Below are positions 24,474-50,847 of a DNA stretch of 64,000 bases, piece after piece. The stretch is from the NCBI RefSeq assembly GCF_902713615.1, contig NC_052158.1, forward strand, positions 39,609,729 to 39,673,728. The letters run 5' to 3'. Position numbers and translations under genes: made by a program. Source of the DNA: Scyliorhinus canicula (lineage: Eukaryota). Position 1 is the first letter of the stretch. Each line of letters starts with the position of its first letter. Under the pieces are notes generated by a model. That model had not been told where the DNA came from, made no database searches, and worked only from the letters and a program-made list of their open reading frames with translations.

Positions 24474-24517
24474 TCAGTCCTTAATGGGAGCAATTTTGTA
24501 GATCACACTTTGTAAAT
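24474..24517 (-). CDS. MHC class I terminal exon, cytoplasmic tail DLQSVIYKIAPIKD*
   Basis: Strong acceptor CTAACTGACATTTATTTTACTTCTGCAG|, phase 1 compatible, YxxA motif, TGA at 24476-24474. An extra small cytoplasmic exon cannot be excluded. Confidence 0.72.
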
Positions 24518-27500
24518 CTGCAGAAGTAAAATAAATGTCAGTTAGAATGGGGAATAATCCATTATCAGAGAGTGAGAACACAACAAGTGTGAGGGAATGG
24601 AGATTGTGTGAGAAATACTCATTCCCACACTCCCATCCATCCTTACACTTTATGGAGATCCATTAGATCTCTTCCATACCATCCATATTCAGTAGGTGAG
24701 GATGTGAGTGTGTGTGGTGGGTTTAAGACCAGAAGAACATGAGACATAAGAGCTGAATTAGGCCACTCGGCCCATCGAGTCTGCTCTGCCATTCCACCAT
24801 GGCTGATGTTTTTGTCATCCCAGTTCTCCTGCCTTATCCCCATGACCCCTGATCCCCTTATTAATCAAGAACCTATCTGTCTCTGTCTTAAAGCCACTCA
24901 GTGATTTGGCCTCCACAGCCTTCTGCGGCAAAGAGTTCCACAGATTCACTACTGTCTGGCTCAAGAAATTCTTCATCATCTCAGTTCTAAAGGATCATCC
25001 CTTCAGTCTGAGGCTGTTCCTTCAGGTTCCAGTTTTTCATGTTTCCAGTGGAAACATCCTCTCCATGTCCACTCTATCCAGTCCTCACAGAAACTGTAAG
25101 TTTCAATAAGATCACCCCTCATCCTTCCAAACTCAAATGAGTACTCACCCGCTCCTCATACTCCAAGCTTTTCATCATTTTTATGAATTTCCTCTGGACC
25201 CTTTCCAAGGCCAGCACATCCTTCCTTAGATACAGGGCCTAAAACTGCTCACAATACTCCAAATGGGATGACCTGTACGCCCACACTCACTCTGTCCCCT
25301 CAGTTCTACATTCCCCTCTCTCTCTCTCTCTCTCCCCTCTCAGTGTCCTGTACTCCCAGTACTGGGGATTCCCCCACACTCACTCTGTCCCCCTCAGTTC
25401 TACATTCCCCTCTCTCTCCCCTCTCAGTGTCCTGTACTCCCAGTACTGGGGATTCCCCCCACACTCACTCTGTCCCCTCAGTTCTACATTCCCCTCTCTC
25501 TCTCTCTCTCTCCCCTCTCAGTGTCCTGTACTCCCAGTACTGGGGATACCCCCACACTCACTCTGTCCCCTCAGTTCTACATTCCCCTCTCTCTCTCTCT
25601 CCCTTCTCAGTGTCCTGTACTCTCAGTACTGGAGATTCCCCCACACTCACTCTGTCCCCTCAGTTCTACATTCCCCTCTCTCTCTCTCTCCCCTCTCACT
25701 GTCCTGTACTCCCAGTACTGGGGATTCCCCCCACACTCACTCTGTCCCCTCAGTTCTACATTCCCCTCTCTCTCTCTCCCCTCTCAGTGTCCTGTACTCC
25801 CAGTACTGGGGATTCCCCCACACTCACTCTGTGCCCTCAGTTCTACATTCCCCTCTCTCTCCCCTCTCAGTGTCCTGTACTCCCAGTACTGGGGATTCCC
25901 CCACACTCACTCTGTCCCCCTCAGTTCTACATTCCCCTCTCTCTCCCCTCTCAGTGTCCTGTACTCCCAGTACTGGGGATTCCCCCCACACTCACTCTGT
26001 CCCCTCAGTTCTACATTCCCCTCTCTCCCCTCAGTGTCCTGTACTCCCAGTACTGGGGATTCCCCCCACACTCACTCTGTCCCCCCAGTTCTACATTCCC
26101 CTCTCTCTCCCCTCTCAGTGTCCTGTACTCCCAGTACTGGGGATTCCCCCCACACTCACTCTGTCCCCCCAGTTCTACATTCCCCTCTCTCTCCCCTCTC
26201 AGTGTCCTGTACTCCCAGTACTGGGGATTCCCCCCACACTCACTCTGTCCCCCCAGTTCTACATTCCCCTCTCTCTCCCCTCTCAGTGTCCTGTGCACCC
26301 AGTACTGGGGATTCCCCCCACTCACTCTGTCCCCTCAGTTCTACATTCCCCTCTCTATCCCCTCTCAGTGTCCTGTACTCCCAGTACTGGGGATTCCCCC
26401 ACACTCACTCTGTCCCCTCAGTTTTATATTCCCAGCTCTTTGATCCTCACCTCTCCGTATTCTTTTCCAGATGATTATTCCGATTATCCCGACAATAACA
26501 GCCAGTGCCATGATCACTGATCCGATTATAATTCCAAGATTGGCGTATCCCCCACTGTTTCCTGGGAATTCTGAAACACATGTGAATAATATGAGGATTG
26601 TCTCTGTTCCCGGATCCATTCCCGGTTCTGTGTTAATTGGGGACAATTTGAACTGAAGCCGCCCATTGGGAATTGATGGGATTGGTGGGAACGTTGGTTG
26701 TACACTCGCCCGATTTTACTCTCCAGTGAAGTCACTAAAGATTCCCATTGATGGGATGTCAAAGCCGTGTTTTCCCAATCCCGTGGGTTACCTTCCCGGC
26801 CAGTTCAGTTCTAATTCTCCCCAATGTCTCTGTGTCCTGTCCTTGCTCAATCTCCAGGGTAACATTGTACGGCCCAGGATGCAGCATCACAGATGGGATT
26901 CACATCAAACTTCAAAGGGATGAGGAATAAACTGACCACAGGAAACTGGGCTGAGCTGATAATGAGGAAAACAACAGATAAACAGAACAAACTCTTCAAA
27001 AGAAGCACTTGGTACAATCCAACAGCAGAACTTAGTCCTAACCGACTGCAGTGAAGCCACCATGGTCAACACAAGGAATAAGTGAGAGAATCCAACTCAA
27101 AGAAAAGATTCATAAATGTCCAGAGATTGAGTTCCAGACACTTAGACAAGAATCAGCTGATCAAAGAGAGACAGGATGGATCTGTGATGGGGGCTCATGT
27201 CTGATTAATCTCATTGAATTTGATGAAGATCTCACTGACATGGTGGATAAGGGAATGTCTATGGATCTGCTCCAGATGGACTTCCATAGGGTGAATGATT
27301 AAGGGCAGCATTCTCCGTCCCATCACACCAGTTTTTGGGTGCAGCGCACCCCTGCCAGCAGCGGGATTCTCCATCCCACCAGCCGGCCAATGGGGTTTCC
27401 CATAGTGGGCAGTCCAACGCCATCGGGAATCCCCGGGTGTGGGTGCGCTGCCGGCACAACAGAGAATCCCGCCAGCGGAGAATCCAGCCCAAGGTTTCAC

Positions 27501-30500: not shown

Positions 30501-33500
30501 GGATTGTTGGGTTACGGGTATAGGGTGGATGCGTGGGTTTGAGTGGGGTGATCATTGCTCGGCACAACATCGAGGGCCGAAGGGCCTGTTCTGTGCTGTA
30601 CTGTTCTATGTTCTATGTTCTATGGGAAGCATGGTAGCACAGTGGTTAGCACAGTCGCTTCACAGCTCCAGGGTCCCAGGTTTGGTTCCCGGCTGGGTCA
30701 CTATCTGTGCGGAGTCTGCACGTTCTCCCCATGTCTGCGTGTGTTTCCTCCGGGTGCTCCGGTTTCCTCACGCAGTCCAAAGACATGCAGTTTAGGTGGA
30801 TTGGCCATGCTAAATTGCCCTTAGTGTCCAAAAGGTGGGGGTTACTGGATTATGGGGAGAGGGTGGAGGTGTGGACTTGGTAGGGTGCTCTTTCTAAGGG
30901 CTAGTGCAGACTCAATGGGCCGAATGGCCTCCTTCTGCACTGTAAATGCTATGATTCTATGAAAGCTCTTTAGGTCTCTGAAACATTTCAGTGGGAACAG
31001 ACCCAATCACCACCTGTTACCAGACAGAACACCGTGTTTTAGGCCAATTCATTGACCACCAGCCAAATCAGTCAAAACGAGGCATCACTGATCCCACCAG
31101 CCACTGAAATCTTCTGCTTTCATTAAAGGCACAGGCCACTGCTTTCTTCTGCTTGAATTAACAATAAAGGCTGCCTTTACTGACAAACGTCCATCAATCA
31201 TCCATGGATCAAAAATCTGACAGCAAATAAAAGAAACGGGAAATAAGGGAATAAACAGGGAGCAAACAGGAGGGACTGTTAAAAAATACATACACAGACT
31301 CATGTACACACAAATACACACAGACTGAAACACATGCACACACAGACACACATAAGACTCACATACATACAAATACACATGTGCAGACATGCAAACATAC
31401 CACATAGTGCAATTCCTTACCCCACTGATGGAGCTTGGGCTCTGCCAGGCTGCTGTGTTCAATTTGACAGGAGTATTGATCCTCATCCCCAGCATTTATT
31501 TCAATCTCTTTCTGGATCTGATGGCTCCCATCGTGGTTCGGTCGAAGCCCCGAGGATTGTGTCTCAGACATTACCTCTCCATTCCTTAGCCAGGTCACCT
31601 CGATGTCTACAGGATAAAAGCCAGTAACCAGGCAGGAGAGAGTGAGCGGCTTGTACTGACTATTGGCCTCACTTCTGGAGATGAAGACTTCAGGCTGAAC
31701 TGTAATGGGAAAGGGTGAAAACACAAACAATAGACAGACACTGAATGGAATGGGAGAACGGTTTGATAGATCAGTGAAGTTAGATCAGAACATGGATCAA
31801 AACTCAAATCAATACCTTTCCGTCCAAAATATTCCTTTCCAGCTTCTAAATATCTGTTCAAATGTTGAACAAATACTCCTTGAAGATATGTTTCCCAGTA
31901 GCTGTTCCAGGATTGATCCGAATCCCATTTTTCTTTCGTCTTCAATGCAATGGGATTGGTTGCGACCCATCTCATTCTGTCCGGCTCTAAACTAATATAA
32001 TCCTTTCCATCAAATCCAAACCTCATCGATATCTTACAGGAGCCGTCTTCACTGACCTCGACAGACCGAATCCATTGAAAAATGTGAATTCCTGTCAGAG
32101 ACAACAGAATCGATAATCATTCTTATGGGAAATTGAAGCAGAAATGGGGAGATTCAGTCATCAAAGTCAGTGCTGGGGGACTGAGTGCAGTGTCCCAGGG
32201 GTCAGTGCTGGGAGACTGAGTGCAGTGTCCCAGGGGTCAGTGCTGGGGGACTGAGTGCAGTTTCTCAGTGGTCAGTGCTGGGGGACTGAGTGCAGTGTCC
32301 CAGGGGTCAGTGCTGGGGGACTGAGTGCAGTGTCCCAGGGGTCAGTGCTGGGGGACTGAGTGCAGTGTCCAAGGGGTCAGTGCTGGGGGACTGAGTGCAG
32401 TGTCCCAGGGGTCAGTGCTGGGGGACTGAGTGCAGTGTCCCAGGGGTCAGTGCTGGGGGACTGAGCGCAGTGTCCCAGGGGTCAGTGCTGGGGGATGGAC
32501 TGTGTGCAGTGTCCCAGGGGTCAGTGCTGGGGGACTGAGTGCAGTGCCCCAGGGATCAGTGCTGGGGGACTGAGTGCAGTGTCCCAGGGGTCAGTGCTGG
32601 GGGACTGAGTGCAGTGTCCCACGGGTCAGTGCTGGGAGATGGACTGAGTGCAGTGTCCCAGAGGTCAGTGCTGGGGGACTGAGTGCAGTGTCCCAGGGGT
32701 CAGTGCTGGGGGACTGAGTGCAGTGTCCCAGGGGTCAGTGCTGGGGGACTGAATGCAGTGTCGCAGGGGTCAGTGCCGGGGGACTAAGTGCAGTGTCCCA
32801 GGGGTCAGTGCTGGGGGACTGAGTGCAGTGTCCCAGGGGTCAGTGCTGGGAGACAGAGTGCAGTGTCCCAGAGGTCAGTGCTGGGGGACTGAGTGCAGTG
32901 TCCCAGGGGTCAGTGCTGGGGGACTGAGTGCAGTGTCCCAGGGATCAGTGCTGTGGGACTGAGTGAAGTGTCCCAGGGGTCAGTGCTGGGGGACTGAGTG
33001 CAGTGTCCCAGGGGTCAGTGCTGGGGGACTGAGTGCAGTGTCCCAGGGATCAGTGCTGGGGGGCTGAGTGCAGTGTCCCAGGGGTCAGTGCTGGGAGATG
33101 GACTGAGTGCAGTGTCGCAGGGGCCAGTGCTGGGGGACTGAGTGCAGTGTCCCAGGGGTCAGTGCTGGGGGATGGGCTGAGTGCAGTGTCCCAGGGGTCA
33201 GTGCTGGGGGACTGAGTGCAGTGTCCCAGGGGTCAGTGCTGGGGGACTGAGTGCAGTGTCCCAGGGGTCAGTGCTGGGAGACTGAGTGCGGTGTCCCAGG
33301 GGTCAGTGCTGGGGGACTGAGTGCAGTGTCCAAGGGGTCAGTGCTGGGGGACTGAGTGCAGTGTCCCAGGGGTCAGTGCTGGGAGACTGAGTGCAATGTC
33401 CCAGGGGTCAGTGCTGGGGGACTGAGTGCGGTGTCCCAGGGGTCAGTGCAGGGGGACTGAGTGCAGTGTCCCAGGGATCAGTGCTGGGGGACTGAGTGCA

Positions 33501-36500
33501 GTGTCCCAGGGATCAGTGCTGGGAGACTGTGCAGTGTCCCAGGGATCAGTGCTGGGGGACTGTGCAGTGTCCCAGGGATCAGTGCTGGGGGGCTGAGTGC
33601 AGTGTCCCAGGGGTCAGTGCTGGGGGACTGAGTGCAGTGTCCCAGGGGTCAGTGCAGGGGGACTGAGTGCAGTGTCCCAGGGGTCAGTGCTGGGGGATGG
33701 GCTGAGTGCAGTGTCCCAGGGGTCAGAACTGGGAGATGGACTGAGTGCAGTGTCCCAGGGGTCAGTGCTGGGGGACTGAGTGCAGTGTCCCAGGTATCAG
33801 TGCAGGGGGACTGAGTGCAGTGTCCCAGGGATCAGTGCTGGGGGATGGACTGAGTGCAGTGTCCCAGGGGTCAGTGCTGGGGACTGAGTGCAGTGTCCCA
33901 GGGGTCAGTGCTGGGGGACTGAGTGAAGTGTTGCAGGGGTCAGTGCTGGAGGACTGAGTGCAGTGTCCCAGGGGTCAGTGCTGGGGGACTGAGTGCAGTG
34001 TCCCAGGGGTCAGTGCTGGGGGACTGAGTGCAGTGTACCAGGGGTCAGTGCTGGGGGACTGAGTGCAGTGTCCCAGGGGTCAGTGCTGGGGGACTGAGTG
34101 CAGTGTCCCAGGGGTCAGTGCTGGGGGACTGAGTGCAGTGTCCCAGGGGTCAGTGCTGGGAGATGGGCTGAGTGCAGTGTCCCAGGGGTCAGTGCTGGGG
34201 GACTGAGTGCAGTGTCCCAGGGGTCAGTGCAGGGGGACTGAGTGCAGTGTCCCAGGGGTCAGTGCTGGGGGATGGGCTGAGTGCAGTGTCCCAGGGGTCA
34301 GTACTGGGAGATGGACTGACTGCAGTGTCCCAGGGATCAGTGCTGGGAGACTGAGTACAGTGCCCAGGGGTCAGTGCTGGGGGATGGGCTGAGTGCAGTG
34401 TCCCAGGGGTCAGAACTGGGAGATGGACTGAGTGCAGTGTCCCAGGGATCAGTGCTGGGAGACTGAGAACAGTGCCCAGGGGTCAGTGCTGGGGGACTGA
34501 GTGCAGTGTCCCAGGGGTCAGTGCTGGGGGACTGAGTGCAGTGTCCCAGGGGTCAGTGCTGGGAGATGGACTGAGTGTAGTGTCCCAGGGGTCAGTGCTG
34601 GGGGACTGAATGCAGTGTCGCAGGGGTCAGTGCTGGGGAGACTGAGTGCAGTGTCCCAGGGGTCAGTGCTGGGAGACAGAGTGCAGTGTCCCAGGGATCA
34701 GTGCTGGGGGACTGAGTGCAGTGTCCCAGTGGTCAGTGCTGGGGGCTGAGTGCAGTATCCCATGGGTCAGTGCTGGGGGACTGAGTGCAGTGTCCCAGGG
34801 ATCAGTGCTGGTGGACTGAGTGCCGTGTCCCAGGGGTCAGTGTTGGGGGACTGAGTGCAGTATCCCAGGGGTCAGTGCTGGGGGCTGAGTGCAGTGTCCC
34901 AGGGATCAGTGCTGGGAGATGGACTGAGTGCAGTGTCGCAGGAGCCAGTGCTGGGGGACTGAGTGCATTGTCCCAGGGGTCAGTGCTGGGAGATGGACTG
35001 AGTGCATTGTCCCAGGGGTCAGTGCTGGGAGATGGACTGAGTGCAGTGGCCAAGGGGTCAGGGCTGGGGACTGAGTGCAGTGTCCCAGGGGTCAGTGCTG
35101 GGGGACTGAGTGCAGTGTCCCAGGGGTCAGTGCTGGGGGACTGAGTGCAGTGTCCCAGGGGTCAGTGCTGGGAGACTGAGTGCAGTGTCCCAGGGGTCAG
35201 TGCTGGGGGACTGAGTGCAGTGTCCCAGGGGTCAGTGCTGGGGGACTGAGTGCAGTGTCCCAGGGGTCAGTGCTGGGGGACTGAGTGCAGTGTCCCAGGG
35301 GATCAGTGCTGGGGGACTGAGTGCAGTGTCCCAGGGGTCAGTGCTGGGGGACTGAGTGCAGTGTCCCAGGGGTCAGTGCTGGGGGACTGAGTGCAGTGTC
35401 CCAGGGATCAGTGCTGGGGGACTGAGTGCAGTGTCCCAGGGGTCAGTGCTGGGAGGACTGAGTGCAGTGTCCCAGGGGTCAGTGCTGGGGGACTGAGTGC
35501 AGTGTCCCAGGGGTCAGTGCTGGGGGGCTGAGTGCAGTGTCCCAGGGGTCAGTGCTGGGGGACTGAGTGCAGTGTCCCAGGGGTCAGTGCTGGGGGACTG
35601 AGTGCAGTGTCCCAGGGGTCAGTGCTGGGGGATGGGCTGAGTGCAGTGTCCCAGGGGTCAGTACTGGGAGATGGACTGACTGCAGTGTCCCAGGGGATCA
35701 GTACTGGGAGACTGAGTACAGTGCCCAGGGGTCAGTGCTGGGGGACTGAGTGCAGTGTCCCAGGGGTCAGTGCTGGGGGCTGAGTGCAGTGTCCCAGGGG
35801 TCAGTGCTGGGGGACTGAGTGCAGTGTCCCAGGGGTCAGTGCTGGGGGATGGCTGAGTGCAGTGTCCCAGGGGTCAGACTGGGAGATGGACTGAGTGCAG
35901 TGTCCCAGGGGTCAGTGCTGGGGGACTGAGTGCAGTGTCCCAGGGTATCAGTGCATGGGGGACTGAGTGCAGTGTCCCAGGGGTCAGTGCTGGGGGATGG
36001 ACTGAGTGCAGTGTCCCAGGGGTCAGTGCTGGGGACTGAGTGCAGTGTCCCAGGGGTCAGTGCTGGGGGACTGAGTGAAGTGGTGCCAGGGGTCAGTGCT
36101 GGGAGGACTGAGTGCAGTGTCCCAGGGGTCAGTGCTGGGGGACTGAGTGCAGTGTCCCAGGGGTCAGTGCTGGGGGACTGAGTGCAGTGTCCCAGGGGTC
36201 AGTGCTGGGGGACTGAGTGCAGTGTCCCAGGGGTCAGTGCTGGGGGACTGAGTGCAGTGTCCCAGGGGTCAGTGCTGGGGGACTGAGTGCAGTGTCCCAG
36301 GGGTCAGTGCTGGGGGACTGAGTGCAGTGTCCCAGGGGTCAGTGCTGGGGGACTGAGTGCAGTGTCCCAGGGGTCAGTGCTGGGGGATGGCTGAGTGCAG
36401 TGTCCCAGGGGTCAGTGCTGGGAGAGGACTGAGTGCAGTGTCCCAGGGATCAGTGCTGGGGGACTGAGTGCAGTGTCCCAGGGGTCAGTGCTGGGGGAGG

Positions 36501-39500
36501 CTGAGTGCAGTGTCCCAGGGTTCAGTAGCTGGGAGATGGACTGAGTGCAGTGTCCCAGGGGTCAGTGCTGGGAGACTGAGTAGCAGTGTCCCAGGGGTCA
36601 GTGCTGGGGGACTGAGTGCAGTGTCCCAGGGGTCAGTGCTGGGGGACTGAGTGCAGTGTCCCAGGGGTCAGTGCTGGGGATGGACTGAGTGCAGTGTCCC
36701 AGGGATCAGTGCTGGGGGACTGAGTACAGTGTCCCAGGGGTCAGTGCTGGGGGACTGAGTGCAGTGTCCCAGGGGTCAGTGCTGGGAGATGGACTGAGTG
36801 TAGTGTCCCAGGGGTCAGTGCTGGGGGACTGAATGCAGTGTCGCAGGGGTCAGTGCTGGGAGACTGAGTGCAGTGTCCCAGGGGTCAGTGCTGGGAGACA
36901 GAGTGCAGTGTCCCAGGGGTCAGTGCTGGGGGACTGAGTGCAGTGTCCCAGGGGTCAGTGCTGGAGATGGACTGAGTGTAGTGTCCCAGGGGTCAGTGCT
37001 GGGGGACTGAATGCAGTGTCGCAGGGGTCAGTGCTGGGAGACTGAGTGCAGTGCCCCAGGGGTCAGTGCTGGGGGACTGAGTGCAGTGTCCCAGGTATCA
37101 GTGCTGGGGGACTGAGTGCAGTGTCCCAGTGGTCAGTGCTGGGGGACTGAGTGCAGTATCCCAGGGGTCAGTGCTGGGGGGACTGAGTGCAGTGTCCCAG
37201 GGGTCAGTGCTGGGGGACTGAGTGCCGTGTCCCAGGGGTCAGTGCTGGGGGACTGAGTGCAGTGTCCCAGGGATCAGTGCTGGGAGATGGACTGAGTGCA
37301 GTGTCGCAGGGGTCAGTGCTGGGGGACTGAGTGCAGTGTCCCAGGGGTCAGTGCTGGGAGATGGACTGAGTGCAGTGTCCCAGGGGTCAGTGCTGGGAGA
37401 TGGACTGAGTGCAGTGTCCCAGGGGTCAGTGCTGGGGGACTGAGTGCAGTGTCCCAGGGGTCAGTGCTGGGGGACTGAGTGCAGTGTCCCAGGGGTCAGT
37501 GCTGGGGGACTGAGTGCAGTGTCCCATGGGGTCAGTGCTGGGAGACTGAGTGCAGTGTCCCAGGGGTCAGTGCTGGGGGACTGAGTGCGGTGTCCCAGGG
37601 GTCAGTGCAGGGGGACTGAGTGCAGTGTCCCAGGGATCAGTGCTGGGGGACTGAGTGCAGTGTCCCAGGGATCAGTGCTGGGGGACTGAGTGCAGTGTCC
37701 CAGGGGTCAGTGCTGGGGGACTGAGTGCAGTGTCCCAGGGGTCAGTGCTGGGGGACTGAGTGCAGTGTCCCAGGGATCAGTGCTGGGGGACTGAGTGCAG
37801 TGTCCCAGGGGTCAGTGCTGGAGGACTGAGTGCAGTGTCCCAGGGGTCAGTGCTGGGGGACTGAGTGCAGTGTCCCAGGGATCAGTGCTGGGGGGCTGAG
37901 TGCAGTGTCCCAGGGGTCAGTGCTGGGGGACTGAGTGCAGTGTCCCAGGGGTCAGTGCAGGGGGACTGAGTGCAGTGTCCCAGGGGTCAGTGCTGGGGGA
38001 TGGGCTGAGTGCAGTGTCCCAGGGGTCAGTACTGGGAGATGGACTGACTGCAGTGTCCCAGGGATCAGTACTGGGAGACTGAGTACAGTGCCCAGGGGTC
38101 AGTGCTGGGGGACTGAGTGCAGTGTCCCAGGGGTCAGTGCTGGGGGGCTGAGTGCAGTGTCCCAGGGTCAGTGCTGGGGGACTGAGTGCAGTGTCCCAGG
38201 GGTCAGTGCTGGGGGACTGAGTGCAGTGTCCCAGGGAATCAGTGCTGGGGGATGGCCTGAGTGCAGTGTCCCAGGGGTCAGTGCTGGGGGGACTGAGTGC
38301 AGTGTCCCAGGGGTCAGTGCTGGGGGACTGAGTGCAGTATCCCAGGGGTCAGTGCTGGGGACTGAGTGCAGTGTCCCAGGGGTCAGTGCTGGGGGATGGG
38401 CAGAGTGCAGTGTTGCAGGGGTCACTGCTTGGGGACTGAGTGCAGTGTCCCAGGGGTCAGTGCTGGGGAGGGACTGAGTGCAGTGTCCCAGGGTCAGTGC
38501 TGGGGGACTGTGCAGTGTCCCAGGGGTCAGTGCTGGGGGTCTGAGTGCAGTGTCCCAGGGGTCAGTGCTGGGGGACCTGAGTGCAGTGTCCCAGGGGTCA
38601 GTGCCTGGGGACTGAGTGCAGTGTCCCAGGGATCAGTGCTGGGGGGACTGAGTGCAGTGTCCCAGGGGTCAGTGCTGGGGGACTGAGTGCAGTGTCCCAG
38701 GGGTCAGTGCTGGGAGATTGACTGAGTGCAGTGTCCCAGGGGTCAGTGCTGGGGGACTGAGTGCAGTGTCCCAGGGGTCAGTGCTGGGGGACTGAGTGCA
38801 GTGTCCCAGGGGTCAGTGCTGGGGAGACTGAGTGCAGTGTCCCAGGGGTCAGTGCTGGGGGACTGAGTGCAGTGTACCAGGGGTCAGTGCTGGGCGACTG
38901 AGTACGGTGTCCCAGGGGTCAGTGCTGGGGGACTGAGTGCAGTGTCCCAGGGGTCAGTGCTGGGAGACTGAGTGCAGTGTCCCAGGGGTCAGTGCTGGGG
39001 GACTGAGTGCAGTGTCCCAGGGGTCAGTGCTGGGGATGGACTGAGTGCAGTGTCCCAGGGGTCAGTGCTGGGGGACTGAGTGCAGTGTCCCAGGGATCAG
39101 TGCTGGGGGACTGAGTGAAGTGTCCCAGGGGTCAGTGCTGGGGGACTGAGTGCAGTGTCCCAGGGGTCAGTGCTGGGGGACTGAGTGCAGTGTACCAGGG
39201 ATCAGTGCTGGGGGGCTGAGTGCAGTGTCCCAGGGGTCAGTGCTGGGAGATGGACTGAGTGCAGTGTCGCAGGGGCCAGTGCTGGGGGACTGAGTGCATT
39301 GTCCCAGGGGTCAGTGCTGGAGGATGGGCTGAGTGCAGTGTCCCAGGGGTCAGTGCTGGGGGACTGAGTGCAGTGTCCCAGGGGTCTGTGCTGGGAGACT
39401 GAGTGCGGTGTCCCAGGGGTCAGTGCTGGGGGACTGAGTGCAGTGTCCAAGGGGTCAGTGCTGGGGGACTGAGTGCAGTGTCCCAGGGGTCAGTGCTGGG

Positions 39501-42500
39501 AGACTGAGTGCAATGTCCCAGGGGTCAGTGCTGGGGGACTGAGTGCGGTGTCCCAGGGATCAGTGCTGGGGGACTGAGTGCAGTGTCCCAGGGATCAGTG
39601 CTGGGGGACTGAGTGCAGTGTCCCAGGGGTCAGTGCTGGGGGACTGAGTGCAGTGTCCCAGGGGTCAGTGCTGGGGGACTGAGTGCAGTGTCCCAGGGGT
39701 CAGTGCTGGGAGGGACTGAGTGCAGTGTCCCAGGGTCAGTGCTGGGGGACTGAGTGCAGTGTCCCAGGGGTCAGTGCTGGGGGACTGAGTGCAGTGTCCC
39801 AGGGGTCAGTGCTGGGGGACTGAGTGCAGTGTCCCAGGGGTCAGTGCTGGGGGACTGAGTGCAGTGTCCCAGGGGTCAGTGCTGGGGGACTGAGTGCAGT
39901 GTCCCAGGGGTCAGTGCTGGGGGACTGAGTGCAGTGTCCCAGGGGTCAGTGCTGGGGGACTGAGTGCAGTGTCCCAGGGGTCAGTGCTGGGATGGACTGA
40001 GTGCAGTGTCCCAGGGGTCAGTGCTGGGGGACTGAGTGCAGTGTCCCAGGGGTCAGTGCTGGGGGACTGAGTGCAGTGTCCCAGGGGTCAGTGCTGGGAG
40101 ACTGAGTGCAGTGTCCCAGGGGTCAGTNNNNNNNNNNNNNNNNNNNNNNNNNNNNNNNNNNNNNNNNNNNNNNNNNNNNNNNNNNNNNNNNNNNNNNNNN
40201 NNNNNNNNNNNNNNNNNNNNNNNNNNNNNNNNNNNNNNNNNNNNNNNNNNNNNNNNNNNNNNNNNNNNNNNNNNNNNNNNNNNNNNNNNNNNNNNNNNNN
40301 NNNNNNNNNNNNNNNNNNNNNNNNNNNNNNNNNNNNNNNNNNNNNNNNNNNNNNNNNNNNNNNNNNNNNNNNNNNNNNNNNNNNNNNNNNNNNNNNNNNN
40401 NNNNNNNNNNNNNNNNNNNNNNNNNNNNNNNNNNNNNNNNNNNNNNNNNNNNNNNNNNNNNNNNNNNNNNNNNNNNNNNNNNNNNNNNNNNNNNNNNNNN
40501 NNNNNNNNNNNNNNNNNNNNNNNNNNNNNNNNNNNNNNNNNNNNNNNNNNNNNNNNNNNNNNNNNNNNNNNNNNNNNNNNNNNNNNNNNNNNNNNNNNNN
40601 NNNNNNNNNNNNNNNTGCAGTGTCCCAGGGGTCAGTGCTGGGGGACTGAGTGCAGTGTCCCAGGGGTCAGTGCTGGGGGACTGAGTGCAGTGTCCCAGGG
40701 GTCAGTGCTGGGGGACTGAGTGCAGTGTCCCAGGGGTCAGTGCTGGGGGACTGAGTGCAGTGTCCCAGGGGTCAGTGCTGGGGGACTGAGTGCAGTGTCC
40801 CAGGGGTCAGTGCTGGGGGACTGAGTGCAGTGTCCCAGGGGTCAGTGCTGGGGGACTGAGTGCAGTGTCCCAGGGGTCAGTGCTGGGGGACTGAGTGCAG
40901 TGTCCCAGGGGTCAGTGCTGGGGGACTGAGTGCAGTGTCCCAGGGGTCAGTGCTGGGGACTGAGTGCAGTGTCCCAGGGGTCAGTGCTGGGGGACTGAGT
41001 GCAGTGACCCAGGGGTCAGTGCTGGGGGACTGAGTGCAGTGTCCCAGGGGTCAGTGCTGGGGGACTGAGTGCAGTGTCCAGGGGTCAGTGCTGGGGGACT
41101 GAGTGCAGTGTCCCAGGGGTCAGTGCTGGGGGACTGAGTGCAGTGTCCCAGGGGTCAGTGCTGGGATGGACTGAGTGCAGTGTCCCAGGGGTCAGTGCTG
41201 GGGGACTGAGTGCAGTGTCCCAGGGGTCAGTGCTGGGGGACTGAGTGCAGTGTCCCAGGGGTCAGTGCTGGGGGACTGAGTGCAGTGTCCCAGGGGTCAG
41301 TGCTGGGGGACTGAGTGCAGTGTCCCAGGGGTCAGTGCTGGGGGACTGAGTGCAGTGTCCCAGGGGTCAGTGCTGGGGGACTGAGTGCAGTGTCCCAGGG
41401 GTCAGTGCTGGGGGACTGAGTGCAGTGTCCCAGGGGTCAGTGCTGGGGGACTGAGTGCAGTGTCCCAGGGGTCAGTGCTGGGGGACTGAGTGCAGTGTCC
41501 CAGGGGTCAGTGCTGGGGGACTGAGTGCAGTGTCCCAGGGGTCAGTGCTGGGGGACTGAGTGCAGTGTCCCAGGGGTCAGTGCTGGGGGACTGAGTGCAG
41601 TGTCCCAGGGGTCAGTGCTGGGGGACTGAGTGCAGTGTCCCAGGGGTCAGTGCTGGGGGACTGAGTGCAGTGTCCCAGGGGTCAGTGCTGGGGGACTGAG
41701 TGCAGTGTCCCAGGGGTCAGTGCTGGGGGACTGAGTGCAGTGTCCCAGGGGTCAGTGCTGGGGGACTGAGTGCAGTGTCCCAGGGGTCAGTGCTGGGGGA
41801 CTGAGTGCAGTGTCCCAGGGGTCAGTGCTGGGGGACTGAGTGCAGTGTCCCAGGGGTCAGTGCTGGGGGACTGAGTGCAGTGTCCCAGGGGTCAGTGCTG
41901 GGGGACTGAGTGCAGTGTCCCAGGGGTCAGTGCTGGGGGACTGAGTGCAGTGTCCCAGGGGTCAGTGCTGGGGGACTGAGTGCAGTGTCCCAGGGGTCAG
42001 TGCTGGGGGACTGAGTGCAGTGTCCCAGGGGTCAGTGCTGGGGGACTGAGTGCAGTGTCCCAGGGGTCAGTGCTGGGGGACTGAGTGCAGTGTCCCAGGG
42101 GTCAGTGCTGGGGGACTGAGTGCAGTGTCCCAGGGGTCAGTGCTGGGGGACTGAGTGCAGTGTCCCAGGGGTCAGTGCTGGGGATGACTGAGTGCAGTGT
42201 CCCAGGGGTCAGTGCTGGGAGGACTGAGTGCAGTGTCCCAGGGGTCAGTGCTGGGGGACTGAGTGCAGTGTCCCAGGGGTCAGTGCTGGGGGACTGAGTG
42301 CAGTGTCCCAGGGGTCAGTGCTGGGGGACTGAGTGCAGTGTCCCAGGGGTCAGTGCTGGGGGACTGAGTGCAGTGTCCCAGGGGTCAGTGCTGGGAGGAC
42401 TGAGTGCAGTGTCCCAGGGGTCAGTGCTGGGGGACTGAGTGCAGTGTCCCAGGGGTCAGTGCTGGGGGACTGAGTGCAGTGTCCCAGGGGTCAGTGCTGG

Positions 42501-45500
42501 GGGACTGAGTGCAGTGTCCCAGGGGTCAGTGCTGGGGGACTGAGTGCAGTGTCCCAGGGGTCAGTGCTGGGGGACTGAGTGCAGTGTCCCAGGGGTCAGT
42601 GCTGGGGGACTGAGTGCAGTGTCCCAGGGGTCAGTGCTGGGGGACTGAGTGCAGTGTCCCAGGGGTCAGTGCTGGGGGACTGAGTGCAGTGTCCCAGGGG
42701 TCAGTGCTGGGGGACTGAGTGCAGTGTCCCAGGGGTCAGTGCTGGGGGACTGAGTGCAGTGTCCCAGGGGTCAGTGCTGGGGGACTGAGTGCAGTGTCCC
42801 AGGGGTCAGTGCTGGGGGACTGAGTGCAGTGTCCCAGGGGTCAGTGCTGGGGGACTGAGTGCAGTGTCCCAGGGGTCAGTGCTGGGGGACTGAGTGCAGT
42901 GTCCCAGGGGTCAGTGCTGGGGGACTGAGTGCAGTGTCCCAGGGGTCAGTGCTGGGGGACTGAGTGCAGTGTCCCAGGGGTCAGTGCTGGGGGACTGAGT
43001 GCAGTGTCCCAGGGGTCAGTGCTGGGGGACTGAGTGCAGTGTCCCAGGGGTCAGTGCTGGGGGACTGAGTGCAGTGTCCCAGGGGTCAGTGCTGGGGGAC
43101 TGAGTGCAGTGTCCCAGGGGTCAGTGCTGGGGGACTGAGTGCAGTGTCCCAGGGGTCAGTGCTGGGGGACTGAGTGCAGTGTCCCAGGGGTCAGTGCTGG
43201 GGGACTGAGTGCAGTGTCCCAGGGGTCAGTGCTGGGGGACTGAGTGCAGTGTCCCAGGGGTCAGTGCTGGGGGACTGAGTGCAGTGTCCCAGGGGTCAGT
43301 GCTGGGGGACTGAGTGCAGTGTCCCAGGGGTCAGTGCTGGGGGACTGAGTGCAGTGTCCCAGGGGTCAGTGCTGGGGGACTGAGTGCAGTGTCCCAGGGG
43401 TCAGTGCTGGGGGACTGAGTGCAGTGTCCCAGGGGTCAGTGCTGGGGGACTGAGTGCAGTGTCCCAGGGGTCAGTGCTGGGGGACTGAGTGCAGTGTCCC
43501 AGGGGTCAGTGCTGGGGGACTGAGTGCAGTGTCCCAGGGGTCAGTGCTGGGGGACTGAGTGCAGTGTCCCAGGGGTCAGTGCTGGGGGACTGAGTGCAGT
43601 GTCCCAGGGGTCAGTGCTGGGGATGGACTGAGTGCAGTGTCCCAGGGGTCAGTGCTGGGGGACTGAGTGCAGTGTCCCAGGGGTCAGTGCTGGGGGACTG
43701 AGTGCAGTGTCCCAGGGGTCAGTGCTGGGATGGACTGAGTGCAGTGTCCCAGGGGTCAGTGCTGGGGGACTGAGTGCAGTGTCCCAGGGGTCAGTGCTGG
43801 GGGACTGAGTGCAGTGTCCCAGGGGTCAGTGCTGGGGGACTGAGTGCAGTGTCCCAGGGGTCAGTGCTGGGGGACTGAGTGCAGTGTCCCAGGGGTCAGT
43901 GCTGGGGGACTGAGTGCAGTGTCCCAGGGGTCAGTGCTGGAGTGGACTGAGTGCAGTGTCCCAGGGGTCAGTGCTGGGGGACTGAGTGCAGTGTCCCAGG
44001 GGTCAGTGCTGGGGGACTGAGTGCAGTGTCCCAGGGGTCAGTGCTGGGGGACTGAGTGCAGTGTCCCAGGGGTCAGTGCTGGGGGACTGAGTGCAGTGTC
44101 CCAGGGGTCAGTGCTGGGGGATGGACTGAGTGCAGTGTCCCAGGGGTCAGTGCTGGGGGACTGAGTGCAGTGTCCCAGGGGTCAGTGCTGGGGGACTGAG
44201 TGCAGTGTCCCAGGGGTCAGTGCTGGGGGACCTGAGTGCAGTGTCCCAGGGGTCAGTGCTGGGGGACTGAGTGCAGTGTCCCAGGGGTCAGTGCTGGGGG
44301 ACTGAGTGCAGTGTCCCAGGGGTCAGTGCTGGGGGACTGAGTGCAGTGTCCCAGGGGTCAGTGCTGGGGGACTGAGTGCAGTGTCCCAGGGGTCAGTGCT
44401 GGGGACTGAGTGCAGTGTCCCAGGGGTCAGTGCTGGGGGACTGAGTGCAGTGTCCCAGGGGTCAGTGCTGGGGGACTGAGTGCAGTGTCCCAGGGGTCAG
44501 TGCTGGGGGACTGAGTGCAGTGTCCAGGGGTCAGTGCTGGGGGACTGAGTGCAGTGTCCCAGGGGTCAGTGCTGGGGGACTGAGTGCAGTGTCCCAAGGG
44601 TTAGTGCTGGGGGACAGAGTGCAGTGTCCCAGGGGTCAGTGTTGGGGGACTGAGTGCAGTGTCCCAGTGGTCAGTGCTGGGAGATCGACTGAGTGCAGTG
44701 TCCCAGGGGTCAGTGCTGGGAGATGGACTGAGTGCAGTGTCCCAGGGGTCAGTGCTGGGAGATGGACTGAGTGCTGTGTCCCAGTGGTCAGTGCTGGGGG
44801 CTGTGCAGTGTCCCAGAGGTCAGTGCTGGGGGATGGACTGAGTGCAGTGTCCCAGGGGTCAGTGCTGGGGGACTGAGTGCAGTGTCCCAAGGGTTAGTGC
44901 TGGGTGATGGACTGAGTGCAGTGTCCCAGGGGTCAGTGCTTGGGGACTGAGTGTAGTGTCCCAGGGGTCAGTGCTGGGTGATGGACTGAGTGCAGTGTCC
45001 CACGGGACAGTGCTAGGGGACTGAGTGCAGTGTCCCAAGGGTTAGTGCTGGGGGACTGAGTGCGGTGTCCCAGGGGTCAGTGCTGGGGGACTGAGTGCAG
45101 TGTCCCAGGGGTCAGTGCTGGGGGACTGAGTGCAGTGTCCCAGGGGTCAGTGCTGGGGGACTGAGTGCAGTGTCCCAGGGGTCAGTGCTGGGGGACTGAG
45201 TGCAGTGTCCCAGGGGTCAGTGCTGGGGGACTGAGTGCAGTGTCCCAGGGGTCAGTGCTGGGAGGACTGAGTGCAGTGTCCCAGGGGTCAGTGCTGGGGG
45301 ACTGAGTGCAGTGTCCCAGGGGTCAGTGCTGGGGGACTGAGTGCAGTGTCCCAGGGGTCAGTGCTGGGGACTGAGTGCAGTGTCCCAGGGGTCAGTGCTG
45401 GGGGACTGAGTGCAGTGTCCCAGGGGTCAGTGCTGGGGGACTGAGTGCAGTGTCCCAGGGGTCAGTGCTGGGGGACTGAGTGCAGTGTCCCAGGGGTCAG

Positions 45501-50609: not shown

Positions 50610-50795
50610 ACCTGTCCTGGACACAAATCCCATCAGAGTCTGACACACTGTGCTGACTTCAATGGTGTCAGATATCAGGCTGGCTGTATAACAGGCGTCT
50701 GATCAAATATCACCCATTTCAAACTCTCCCCAAAAGATTCACATTAACCCCAGAGAGAGAGAGAGTGAGAATGGAAGAATGAATTCTGTACTTAC

Positions 50796-50847
50796 CGGGA
50801 GAGACCCAGGAAAAACACAGGGAGATGGAAAAAAGGATCAGCAACAT
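50796..50847 (-). CDS. Duplicate leader exon (MLLILFSISLCFSWVSP), candidate alternative first exon
   Basis: 52 nt, same peptide as 47116-47167 (one synonymous change), intact ATG and G|GTAAG donor. Confidence 0.7.

What the first reader, a model, noticed from the sequence alone, without database searches (positions are those of the whole stretch)
31816..32091. Alpha2 domain has lost both cysteines of the canonical class I disulfide
Seen: HIFQWIRSVEV places Val at position 101 and YLQGVFVQHL places Phe at 164 (HLA-A2 numbering). W167 is His. One cysteine appears elsewhere in alpha2 (GSCK, about 109-110) and one in alpha1 (RRCIP, about 45). Established: C101-C164 is among the most conserved class I features and ties the alpha2 helix to the floor. 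Inference: the paired replacement by two hydrophobic residues in an otherwise intact gene suggests adaptive remodelling (a more flexible or hydrophobic groove) rather than decay. The two new cysteines should be too far apart to pair, so they may be free thiols for ligand or dimer linkage.
Basis: partly seen in the sequence, partly recalled or inferred. Interest (0 to 1): 0.75.

Follow-up and report, generated by a model that had tools for sequence, protein, structure and literature searches.

The report
Disulfide-less shark nonclassical MHC class I gene
The exon belongs to an intact catshark nonclassical MHC class I gene, and its missing alpha2 disulfide is an ancient trait of a whole shark-only gene family that is already annotated and mapped, so it is real biology but not a new discovery.

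Summary
Window 31816-32091 (minus strand) is a 276-nt, phase-1 alpha2 exon with AG/GT borders. It encodes Val at position 101, Phe at 164 and His at 167, plus a Cys at about 109-110; the alpha1 exon has a Cys in RRCIP.

The trait is not specific to this gene. The gene is LOC119975568 (product P0197) on Scyliorhinus canicula chromosome 13, inside a published MHC-Ib cluster. By copy number and synteny the family is most likely the UEA lineage.
- In 97 alpha2 domains from 13 shark species, none of the 91 that cover position 101 has Cys there (84 have Val).
- None has Gly100 or Trp167.
- Position 164 is one of the most variable sites (Leu, Phe, Tyr, Ser, Gly, Asp), and is still Cys in 10 domains.
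- The C-terminal anchors T143, K146 and W147 are largely kept.

The gene looks functional. All six exons are intact. Paralogue alpha2 dN/dS is 0.22-0.79. Spliced alpha2-alpha3 RNA contigs occur in three studies. The fold model is confident and docking to catshark beta2-microglobulin is supported.

The "new" cysteines are not special. The alpha1 Cys is shared by 33 of 84 relatives. The alpha2 Cys sits at a buried aliphatic position and occurs only here and in one young paralogue.

The scan reached the same verdict earlier on two paralogues (s1-278456, s1-249186).

The parts
47116..47167 (-). Leader exon, coding part (MLLILFSISLCFSWVSP plus a split codon). A second near-identical copy lies at 50794-50847.
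   Evidence: tblastn of P0197. ATG at 47167-47165 and donor GT at 47115-47114 read.
45814..46074 (-). Alpha1 exon (261 nt, phase 1). It carries Cys at HLA-A2 position 45 (TGT 45950-45952) and the NQT glycosylation site.
   Evidence: 100% match to P0197 residues 18-105. All sampled words of this exon are held in small, probably RNA, runs from at least four studies.
32092..45813 (-). Alpha1-alpha2 intron, 13.7 kb, almost all 35-bp satellite with an N gap. The gap was not filled or read.
31816..32091 (-). Alpha2 exon (276 nt): the finding. Ser100, Val101, Cys at about 109-110, Phe164 and His167. T143, K146, W147, Y159 and Y171 are kept.
31700..31815 (-). Alpha2-alpha3 intron (116 nt). It is removed in RNA.
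   Evidence: A joint from 31699 to 31816, GT..AG on the minus strand, appears in runs X2, X3 and X5. Intron depth is zero in X1, X2 and X5.
31421..31699 (-). Alpha3 exon (C1-set Ig domain) with both Ig cysteines.
   Evidence: Pfam C1-set at E = 2.8e-18. The Cys pair is invariant in 81 of 81 relatives.
26451..26570 (-). Connecting peptide and transmembrane exon (120 nt).
   Evidence: Acceptor AG and donor GT read.
24474..24517 (-). Cytoplasmic tail exon (DLQSVIYKIAPIKD plus the TGA stop).

Best explanation
The exon is the alpha2 domain of an intact, membrane-anchored nonclassical MHC class I heavy chain of the small-spotted catshark (NCBI LOC119975568, protein P0197). The gene is one of at least ten tandem paralogues in the MHC-Ib cluster between rxrb and B2M/BRD2 on chromosome 13. 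By copy number, shark-only distribution and synteny the family is most likely the published UEA lineage.

The family ancestor predates the split of galeomorph and squalomorph sharks. In it, the class I-specific module at the N-terminal (A-pocket) end of the groove was dismantled:
- Gly100-Cys101 on the floor strand became Ser/Thr-Val.
- Trp167 was lost.
- Tyr159 stopped being conserved.
- The now unpaired Cys164 was replaced many times, mostly by large hydrophobic residues (Leu, Phe, Tyr). A minority still keep Cys.

Inferred mechanism: Val101 and Phe164 pack against each other and replace the covalent staple. The alpha2 helix is then held only by hydrophobic contact. The A-pocket end of the groove is reshaped, and the stretch 158-170, including 164, varies between paralogues to set ligand specificity. 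The C-terminal anchor triad (T143, K146, W147), the Asn86 glycan site, the alpha3 Ig disulfide and beta2-microglobulin pairing are kept.

Shown here: the sequence facts, the family-wide pattern, purifying selection, splicing and transcription of the family, and a confident class I fold. Inferred: the packing, the groove reshaping and the ligand type.
For: Identity and position:
- P0197 (S. canicula) matches the window exons at 97-100%.
- The window is G000:C13:39609729-39673728.
- The supplement of PMC10751288 lists NC_052158.1 39634095-39657035, LOC119975568, minus strand, as MHC-Ib. It lies in a cluster of 13 such genes at 39.16-41.12 Mb, beside B2M (41.36 Mb) and BRD2 (41.46 Mb), with rxrb at 34.78 Mb.
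- The main text says this cluster holds single-copy UDA and multicopy UEA, and that UBA lies apart.

Family pattern:
- Ten intact catshark alpha2 exons all lack Cys101 and Cys164. The other class I lineages on the same chromosome keep GC...C...W.
- In 97 alpha2 domains from 13 shark species, position 101 is V84, A3, I2, L2 and never Cys.
- Position 164 is L30, F24, Y11, C10, S7, G5, D5.
- Gly100 and Trp167 are never present.
- Other class I sequences keep C101 in 153 of 157 and C164 in 168 of 179.
- The family is monophyletic (SH-aLRT 99), with at least 21 changes at position 164.
- Among 84 near-full-length relatives, T143 is kept in 63, K146 in 75 and W147 in 84. N86 is kept in 83 of 83. Y159 is kept in only 17 of 84.
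- Position 164 has entropy 2.70, among the highest in the ectodomain.

Function:
- All splice sites are canonical.
- Alpha2 dN/dS is 0.22-0.79 in all 43 paralogue pairs that differ. It is 0.40 for the sheet and first-helix part (residues 92-148) and 0.51 for the long helix.
- The alpha2-alpha3 joint is spliced at the predicted borders in three runs, and F164 is unchanged in four runs.
- The AlphaFold2 model has mean pLDDT 86.5, and 92-97 across alpha1 and alpha2.
- The nearest solved folds are peptide-binding class I of chicken, duck and shark (6lup), with TM-scores of about 0.9.
- Docking to the catshark beta2-microglobulin exon 2 product scored 0.89 in three runs, against a best of 0.03 among 3 controls. 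The runs agreed in 100% of contacts and the partner pLDDT was 92. That mark was reached by 51 of 78 solved complexes and 2 of 108 mismatched pairs. The pass may partly reflect memory of solved class I complexes.

Literature: Wu et al. 2021 (PMC8236899) describe Gly100, the raised Cys101-Cys164 bridge and the upward Trp167 that blocks the groove end as one coupled class I feature. They also note that the homologous Cys pair was lost repeatedly in the other platform domain.
Against: - The name UEA rests on synteny and copy number only. The primary papers (PMC8454915, PMC7002201) are not held, so I could not compare with reference UEA sequences. I also could not check whether the cysteine loss is stated there.
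- No RNA contig joins this window's own alpha1 exon to its alpha2 exon. The contigs that cross 32092 carry an alpha1 end of the paralogue type (...MNAAMKMTS, as in P0226) and read Ala101. So part of the RNA evidence belongs to a close paralogue or an unassembled allele.
- Transcription of the window's alpha1 rests on word shares in runs only guessed to be RNA.
- No coordinates were available, so the Val101-Phe164 contact and the shape of the groove were not measured.
- The dN/dS values come from 273-nt exons and are noisy.
Confidence: 0.82

Rival explanations
1. This is a gene-specific adaptive remodelling. In this one gene the cysteine pair was swapped together for two hydrophobic residues, and two new free cysteines were gained for ligand or dimer linkage.
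For: The gene is intact and both substitutes are hydrophobic. The alpha2 Cys at about 109-110 is indeed young: only this gene and its 95% paralogue have it. It needs two base changes from the family's usual ATT, and it is present in RNA contigs of four runs.
Against: Cys101 is missing from every family member in 13 species. Position 164 varies independently and is still Cys in 10 domains. The alpha1 Cys is shared by 33 of 84 relatives. The alpha2 Cys sits where relatives have Ile, Met or Val, which marks a buried core position. The only other carrier, L002, has a frameshift in alpha3 in the assembly.
Confidence: 0.06
2. This is a decaying or non-functional copy. In a large, fast-turnover gene cluster the loss of a core disulfide marks a pseudogene that merely still has open exons.
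For: The cluster does hold fragments and broken copies: L011, L012, L013 (three stops) and L025. The nearest paralogue has a 1-nt deletion in alpha3. No contig proves the window's own alpha1-alpha2 junction.
Against: All six exons are open with canonical splice sites. dN/dS is below 1 in every pair that differs. Val101 has been fixed since before the two shark superorders split, and the alpha3 cysteines are invariant. Spliced transcripts exist. All sampled words of the alpha1 exon are held in small, probably RNA, runs from at least four studies. The fold and beta2-microglobulin docking models are confident.
Confidence: 0.07
3. The gene is a lipid- or metabolite-presenting molecule of the CD1 or MR1 kind. 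Loss of the disulfide and of Trp167 opens a hydrophobic groove for non-peptide ligands.
For: Val101 and Phe164 are hydrophobic, and Y59 and position 84 are not conserved. The lipid-binding chicken YF1*7.1 and human MR1 are among the structural neighbours. As I recall it (unchecked here), the UEA abstract calls its binding region the most hydrophobic among shark class I. The reviews name other shark lineages (UFA, UGA) as CD1-like.
Against: The peptide C-terminus triad T143, K146 and W147 is strongly kept. The best structural matches are peptide-binding class I. The CD1-like role is already assigned to UFA and UGA. No ligand data exist.
Confidence: 0.2

Closest known systems
Shark UEA nonclassical class I lineage (Almeida et al., J Immunol 2021; mapped by Verissimo et al. 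2023, PMC10751288)
   Same: Multicopy, found in sharks only, and MHC-linked in the class Ib cluster next to B2M and BRD2. The classical peptide-terminus residues are not conserved. This gene is listed in the published catshark map as MHC-Ib.
   Different: Nothing was found that sets it apart. The identity with reference UEA sequences, and whether the paper discusses the cysteine loss, could not be checked because the paper is not held.
Classical class I (shark UAA, PDB 6lup; chicken BF2)
   Same: Same domain and exon layout, the N86 glycan site, the alpha3 Ig disulfide, and T143, K146, W147 and Y171. The predicted fold matches at a TM-score of about 0.9, and beta2-microglobulin docking is predicted.
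   Different: It lacks Gly100, Cys101, Cys164 and Trp167. Y59 is His and position 84 is Ile. It is multicopy, and it is not linked to the TAP and PSMB class Ia region at 51.6-53 Mb.
Class I alpha1 and class II alpha1 domains, which lost the homologous Cys11-Cys74 pair (Wu et al. 2021, PMC8236899)
   Same: They are precedents that the helix-on-sheet platform domain can stay folded without this bridge, and that the pair has been lost repeatedly in evolution.
   Different: Those losses are in the domain that rests on an Ig domain, which Wu et al. suggest makes the bridge redundant. Here the loss is in the alpha2 domain, the part they describe as free of Ig support.
Xenopus XNC (mhc1-uba) expanded nonclassical class I family
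   Same: A large, heterogeneous, oligomorphic nonclassical class I multigene family with remodelled pockets, thought to serve innate-like T cells.
   Different: It has an independent origin in amphibians. Nothing on its alpha2 disulfide was examined here.

Membership tests
MHC class I heavy chain | Alpha1/alpha2 platform domain recognisable by profile | tested here: met
   Pfam PF00129 matches the alpha2 exon at E = 7e-18. The alpha1 exon alone gives no hit at E <= 0.01. Full-length P0197 carries PF00129 in the precomputed list.
MHC class I heavy chain | Membrane-proximal C1-set Ig domain with its cysteine pair | tested here: met
   PF07654 at E = 2.8e-18. Both cysteines are present, and the pair is invariant in 81 of 81 relatives.
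MHC class I heavy chain | One exon per domain, phase-1 introns, leader, transmembrane and cytoplasmic exons | tested here: met
   Six exons were mapped, all with canonical AG/GT borders.
MHC class I heavy chain | Alpha2 intradomain disulfide Cys101-Cys164 | tested here: not met
   Val101 and Phe164. The pair is absent from the whole family. Many accepted class I-like molecules depart in single hallmarks, so this argues against 'classical', not against the fold.
MHC class I heavy chain | Association with beta2-microglobulin | tested here: inconclusive
   The prediction is supportive only. The score was 0.89 against a best of 0.03 among 3 controls, with 100% contact agreement between runs and a partner pLDDT of 92. 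The mark was reached by 51 of 78 solved complexes and 2 of 108 mismatched pairs, and the pass may come from memory of solved complexes.
Classical (peptide-presenting) class I, UAA type | [quoted passage not shown] | tested here: not met
   The window gene keeps 6 of 8 (Y59 is His, position 84 is Ile). In the family, Y159 is kept in only 17 of 84 and Trp167 in none.
Classical (peptide-presenting) class I, UAA type | Linkage to TAP and PSMB in the class Ia region; single or few loci | tested here: not met
   The gene is at 39.6 Mb in a cluster of 13 MHC-Ib genes. TAP1, PSMB8, TAP2 and the MHC-Ia genes lie at 51.6-53.0 Mb.
Shark UEA lineage | Multicopy family | tested here: met
   There are ten intact alpha2 exons plus four fragments or broken copies in the catshark genome. 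Other sharks have many copies each.
Shark UEA lineage | Lies in the class Ib cluster bounded by B2M/BRD2 and rxrb | tested here: met
   Coordinates from the published supplement, together with the main-text statement.
Shark UEA lineage | Found in sharks but not in rays or chimaeras | tested here: met
   Members were found in 13 shark species of both superorders, including Heptranchias and Pristiophorus. The best ray hits (Mobula, Hypanus) are 36-37% identical and keep both cysteines. The reach is limited to what the protein collections hold.
Shark UEA lineage | Clusters with the published UEA reference sequences | not testable with these tools
   The describing papers and their sequences are not held, and no hit carries a UEA name.

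The most novel reading that the evidence does not exclude
The family dismantled the whole A-pocket closure (Gly100, Cys101, Cys164, Trp167, Tyr159) but kept the C-terminal anchor triad (T143, K146, W147). The result would be a class I groove that is clamped at the ligand's C-terminal end and open or re-specified at the other end. It could present N-terminally extended or N-terminally modified peptides. Position 164, freed from the disulfide, would act as a pocket residue that sets specificity and differs between paralogues. This would be a natural, roughly 300-million-year experiment on what the alpha2 disulfide does in class I assembly and editing.
Probability: 0.25. Interest if true: 0.6.

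Novelty: already known. Interest (0 to 1): 0.3.

Why it matters
In mammals the Cys101-Cys164 bridge is treated as a fixed part of class I folding and of redox-linked peptide loading. A large, old, expressed lineage that does without it offers three things:
- It shows the bridge is dispensable in the alpha2 domain.
- It gives ready-made natural variants (Phe, Leu, Tyr, Gly, Ser, Asp or a lone Cys at 164) for stability and ligand studies.
- It points to the A-pocket end of the groove as the place where shark nonclassical class I genes diversify.

For this scan the practical point is different. Every member of this gene cluster will raise the same flag, and the trait belongs to the family rather than to any one gene.

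Tried and rejected
- Reading the primary UEA and UDA papers failed by PMC id and by DOI; they are not held. Four further literature searches found no text that describes the cysteine loss in shark class Ib.
- The sequence file S10 of PMC10751288 is not among the held supplements.
The correct frame starts at 32089.
It was corrected.
- I first took PDB 7cpo for the shark structure. It is Anolis carolinensis; the shark entry is 6lup.
- I looked for transcript-derived proteins that would join the window's alpha1 to its alpha2. None turned up beyond the NCBI model.
- I looked for model coordinates to measure the 101-164 and Cys-Cys distances. None are exposed to scripts.
- The pseudogene, sequencing-error and gene-specific readings were considered and rejected, as set out under the rival explanations.
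Full report
**1. The observation**

The finding's coordinates are exactly one exon on the minus strand.
- The acceptor AG is at 32093-32092, the exon runs from 32091 down to 31816 (276 nt, phase 1), and the donor GT is at 31815-31814.
- Read from 32089, the exon gives IHIFQWIRSVEVSEDGSCKISMRFGFDGKDYISLEPDRMRWVATNPIALKTKEKWDSDQSWNSYWETYLQGVFVQHLNRYLEAGKEYFGRK.
- Pfam MHC_I matches at E = 7e-18.
- phmmer aligns it without gaps to solved class I chains. Against 7cpo (Anolis class I, named), irsvev lies over mygcel and tylqgvfvqhl over tyleetciewl.
- So Ser-Val replaces Gly100-Cys101, Phe replaces Cys164 and His replaces Trp167.
- The Cys in GSCK (about 109-110 in HLA-A2 numbering) and the Cys in the alpha1 motif RRCIP are both there. 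By the conserved Pro-Arg that follows, the alpha1 Cys is position 45.

**2. The gene**

NCBI protein P0197 (343 aa, Scyliorhinus canicula) maps back onto the window at 97-100% identity. All exon borders are canonical.

| Exon | Window coordinates (minus strand) |
|---|---|
| Leader (coding part) | 47116-47167; a second copy at 50794-50847 |
| Alpha1 | 45814-46074 |
| Alpha2 | 31816-32091 |
| Alpha3 | 31421-31699 |
| Transmembrane | 26451-26570 |
| Cytoplasmic tail | 24474-24517 |

- The alpha1-alpha2 intron is 13.7 kb of 35-bp satellite with an N gap, which I left alone.
- The window is G000:C13:39609729-39673728 of a 4.22-Gb genome.
- The supplement of Verissimo et al. 2023 (PMC10751288) lists NC_052158.1 39634095-39657035, LOC119975568, minus strand, as MHC-Ib. 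That is this gene.

**3. The surroundings and the lineage**

A six-frame search of the same genome with the alpha2 exon found 27 matches, 26 of them on chromosome 13 and one on contig 1.
- Ten intact exons at 39.29-41.1 Mb are 65-100% identical to the query. All of them lack both cysteines.
- The other class I lineages all read G-C at 100-101, C at 164 and W at 167. These are a cluster at 32.1-32.5 Mb and the MHC-Ia and Ia-like genes at 43.7 and 52.9-53.0 Mb.
- The published map puts the window's cluster (13 MHC-Ib genes, 39.16-41.12 Mb) between rxrb (34.78 Mb) and B2M/BRD2 (41.36/41.46 Mb).
- The paper's text says that this cluster holds single-copy UDA and multicopy UEA, and that multicopy UBA lies apart beyond rxrb.
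- A 2025 review adds that UBA derives from UAA while UEA is older. This fits the 32-Mb cluster, which looks UAA-like.

The window's family is therefore most likely UEA. I could not read the describing papers, so the name rests on synteny and copy number.

**4. How wide and how old the loss is**

An exhaustive profile search and two word-indexed searches gave more than 100 relatives.
- They come from 13 shark species. Eleven are galeomorphs: Scyliorhinus (2 species), Mustelus, Carcharodon, Cetorhinus, Heterodontus, Chiloscyllium (2 species), Hemiscyllium, Stegostoma and Rhincodon. Two are squalomorphs: Heptranchias and Pristiophorus.
- The best ray hits are only 36-37% identical and keep both cysteines.

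Residue counts in 97 family alpha2 domains, against other class I sequences:

| Position | Family | Other class I |
|---|---|---|
| 100 | S, T, I or N; never Gly | mostly Gly |
| 101 | V84, A3, I2, L2; never Cys | Cys in 153 of 157 |
| 164 | L30, F24, Y11, C10, S7, G5, D5, plus single H, V, T, W | Cys in 168 of 179 |
| 167 | H, R, Y, N and others; never Trp | mostly Trp |

- The family is monophyletic (SH-aLRT 99). Position 164 changes at least 21 times on the tree, and Cys164 turns up in three or four separate places.
- In the catshark, codon 101 is GTC in seven of eight distinct copies and GTT in the eighth. Codon 164 is TTT, GGT, CAT, CTG, CTT or TTG. TTT and GGT are each one step from TGT.

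The simplest history is one ancient loss of Cys101 together with Gly100 and Trp167. After that, the orphaned residue 164 was replaced many times independently.

**5. What else changed and what was kept**

Counts below are among 84 near-full-length relatives.
- Kept: the alpha3 cysteines (81 of 81), Asn86 (83 of 83), Trp60 and Trp147 (84 of 84 each), Lys146 (75) and Thr143 (63).
- Not kept: Tyr159 (17 of 84), Tyr59 (30, with Phe in 41), position 84, and Trp167 (none).
- The most variable stretch of alpha2 is 158-170. Position 164 has entropy 2.70.

The remodelling is therefore concentrated at the N-terminal (A-pocket) end of the groove. The C-terminal anchor is conserved.

Wu et al. 2021 (PMC8236899) describe Gly100, the raised Cys101-Cys164 bridge and the upward Trp167 that blocks the groove end as one coupled class I feature. 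They also note that the homologous Cys pair has been lost repeatedly in the other platform domain. The shark family has lost that whole module.

**6. Is the gene alive?**

*Selection.* Alpha2 dN/dS between catshark paralogues is 0.22-0.79 in all 43 pairs that differ. It is 0.22 against the nearest copy. It is 0.40 for the sheet and first-helix part (residues 92-148) and 0.51 for the long helix.

*Transcription.* I laid contigs of four runs from four studies on 31400-32140 at 97% likeness.
- Depth falls on the exons only. It is zero in the 116-nt intron in three runs, and zero beyond 32092 in all four.
- A joint from 31699 to 31816, with GT..AG on the minus strand, appears in X2, X3 and X5. These runs are therefore RNA, and the splice is as predicted.
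- No contig changes the F164 codon or the Cys109 codon.

*A caveat on which copy is expressed.*
- The contigs that cross 32092 continue into an alpha1 end reading ...MNAAMKMTS. That is the paralogue P0226 type, not the window's ...KITNQTS.
- The same contigs read 32061 A>G, which turns Val101 into Ala. They come from a close paralogue or an allele that is not in the assembly.
- The window holds only one alpha1 exon. All of that exon's sampled words are held in other small runs from at least four studies (X25, X11, X7, X10). Three of these also hold about half the words of the alpha2-alpha3 stretch.

*Structure.*
- An AlphaFold2 model built on a 100-sequence alignment has mean pLDDT 86.5, and 92-97 through alpha1 and alpha2. 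Val101 lies in the first alpha2 strand and Phe164 in the long helix.
- Its nearest solved folds are peptide-binding class I of chicken, duck and shark, with TM-scores of about 0.9.

*Beta2-microglobulin.*
- I took the beta2-microglobulin exon 2 product from the B2M locus given in the published map.
- Docking scored 0.89 in three runs, against a best of 0.03 among 3 controls. The runs agreed in 100% of contacts and the partner pLDDT was 92.
- That mark was reached by 51 of 78 solved complexes and 2 of 108 mismatched pairs.
- Class I-beta2-microglobulin complexes are solved, so the pass shows likeness and does not prove binding.

**7. The two extra cysteines**

- The alpha1 Cys (position 45, a B-pocket wall residue in HLA-A2 by established structure) is in 33 of 84 relatives. 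The others have Met, Thr, Ile or Ser there. It is an old variant within the family.
- The alpha2 Cys is found only in this gene and in its 95% paralogue L002. Relatives have Ile 58, Met 14 or Val 12 at that position, which is the signature of a buried aliphatic core residue. An exposed thiol for dimers or ligands is therefore unlikely.
- In the model, the alpha1 Cys lies just before alpha1 strand 4 and the alpha2 Cys at the start of alpha2 strand 2. In the class I sheet four strands lie between them, so they cannot pair. This is an inference from topology, not a measured distance.

**8. Verdict**

But it is a family trait that dates from before the two shark superorders split, and the gene is already annotated and mapped. 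Two earlier follow-ups in this scan reached the same conclusion on paralogues 71 kb before the window's start and 1.43 Mb beyond its end.

What may be worth a specialist's time is the module-level reading. The A-pocket closure has been dismantled, the C-terminal anchor has been kept, and position 164 has become a variable pocket residue. This is inferred and untested.

Noticed in passing
window 32060-32062 and the loose ends at 32092: In all four runs, the RNA contigs that match the 5' end of this alpha2 exon at 97% or more read Ala101 (32061 A>G). They continue into an alpha1 end of the P0226 type (...MNAAMKMTS or ...MNATMKMTS), which is not present in the window. This looks like an expressed allele or paralogue missing from the reference. 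The runs that hold the window's own alpha1 exon are a different set, which hints at haplotype or copy-number variation.
   Followed up: partly
L002 (G000:C13:39708904-39712176), equivalent to window 31487: The nearest paralogue (95% identical in alpha2; product P0226) has a 1-nt deletion in its alpha3 exon. The deletion shifts the frame before the second Ig cysteine. RNA contigs that carry other L002-type letters show no such gap, so this may be a null allele or an assembly error.
   Followed up: partly
L003/L004 (C13:39538250 minus, 39555115 plus) and L007/L008 (C13:40522934 plus, 40475780 minus): Two pairs of alpha2 exons are identical at the DNA level (dN = dS = 0) but lie in opposite orientation, 17 kb and 47 kb apart. 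These are either very recent inverted duplications (palindromes) in the class Ib cluster or assembly artefacts.
   Followed up: no
window 47114-47167 and 50794-50847: There are two copies of the leader exon, each encoding the same signal peptide (MLLILFSISLCFSWVSP). The NCBI gene range ends at window 47307, so the model uses the nearer copy.
   Followed up: partly
window 32092-45813: The alpha1-alpha2 intron is 13.7 kb of a 35-bp satellite with an N gap near 40.1-40.6 kb. The paralogue L002 has the same satellite next to its alpha2 exon, as the many offset blastn matches show. The join of alpha1 to alpha2 in the assembly therefore crosses an unresolved repeat.
   Followed up: no
P0117 (Caranx melampygus), P0023 (Sander lucioperca), P0004 (Acipenser sinensis): A few unnamed class I-like proteins of ray-finned fishes also lack Cys101 and/or Cys164, for example Ser101/Ile164 in the Caranx protein. 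Sporadic independent losses of this bridge therefore occur outside sharks.
   Followed up: no
P0241 (JGI source, 1146-nt contig): A metagenome-labelled contig encodes an intron-less alpha2-alpha3 piece that is 87% identical to this alpha2. It is presumably shark cDNA or RNA carried in an environmental or host-associated sample.
   Followed up: no
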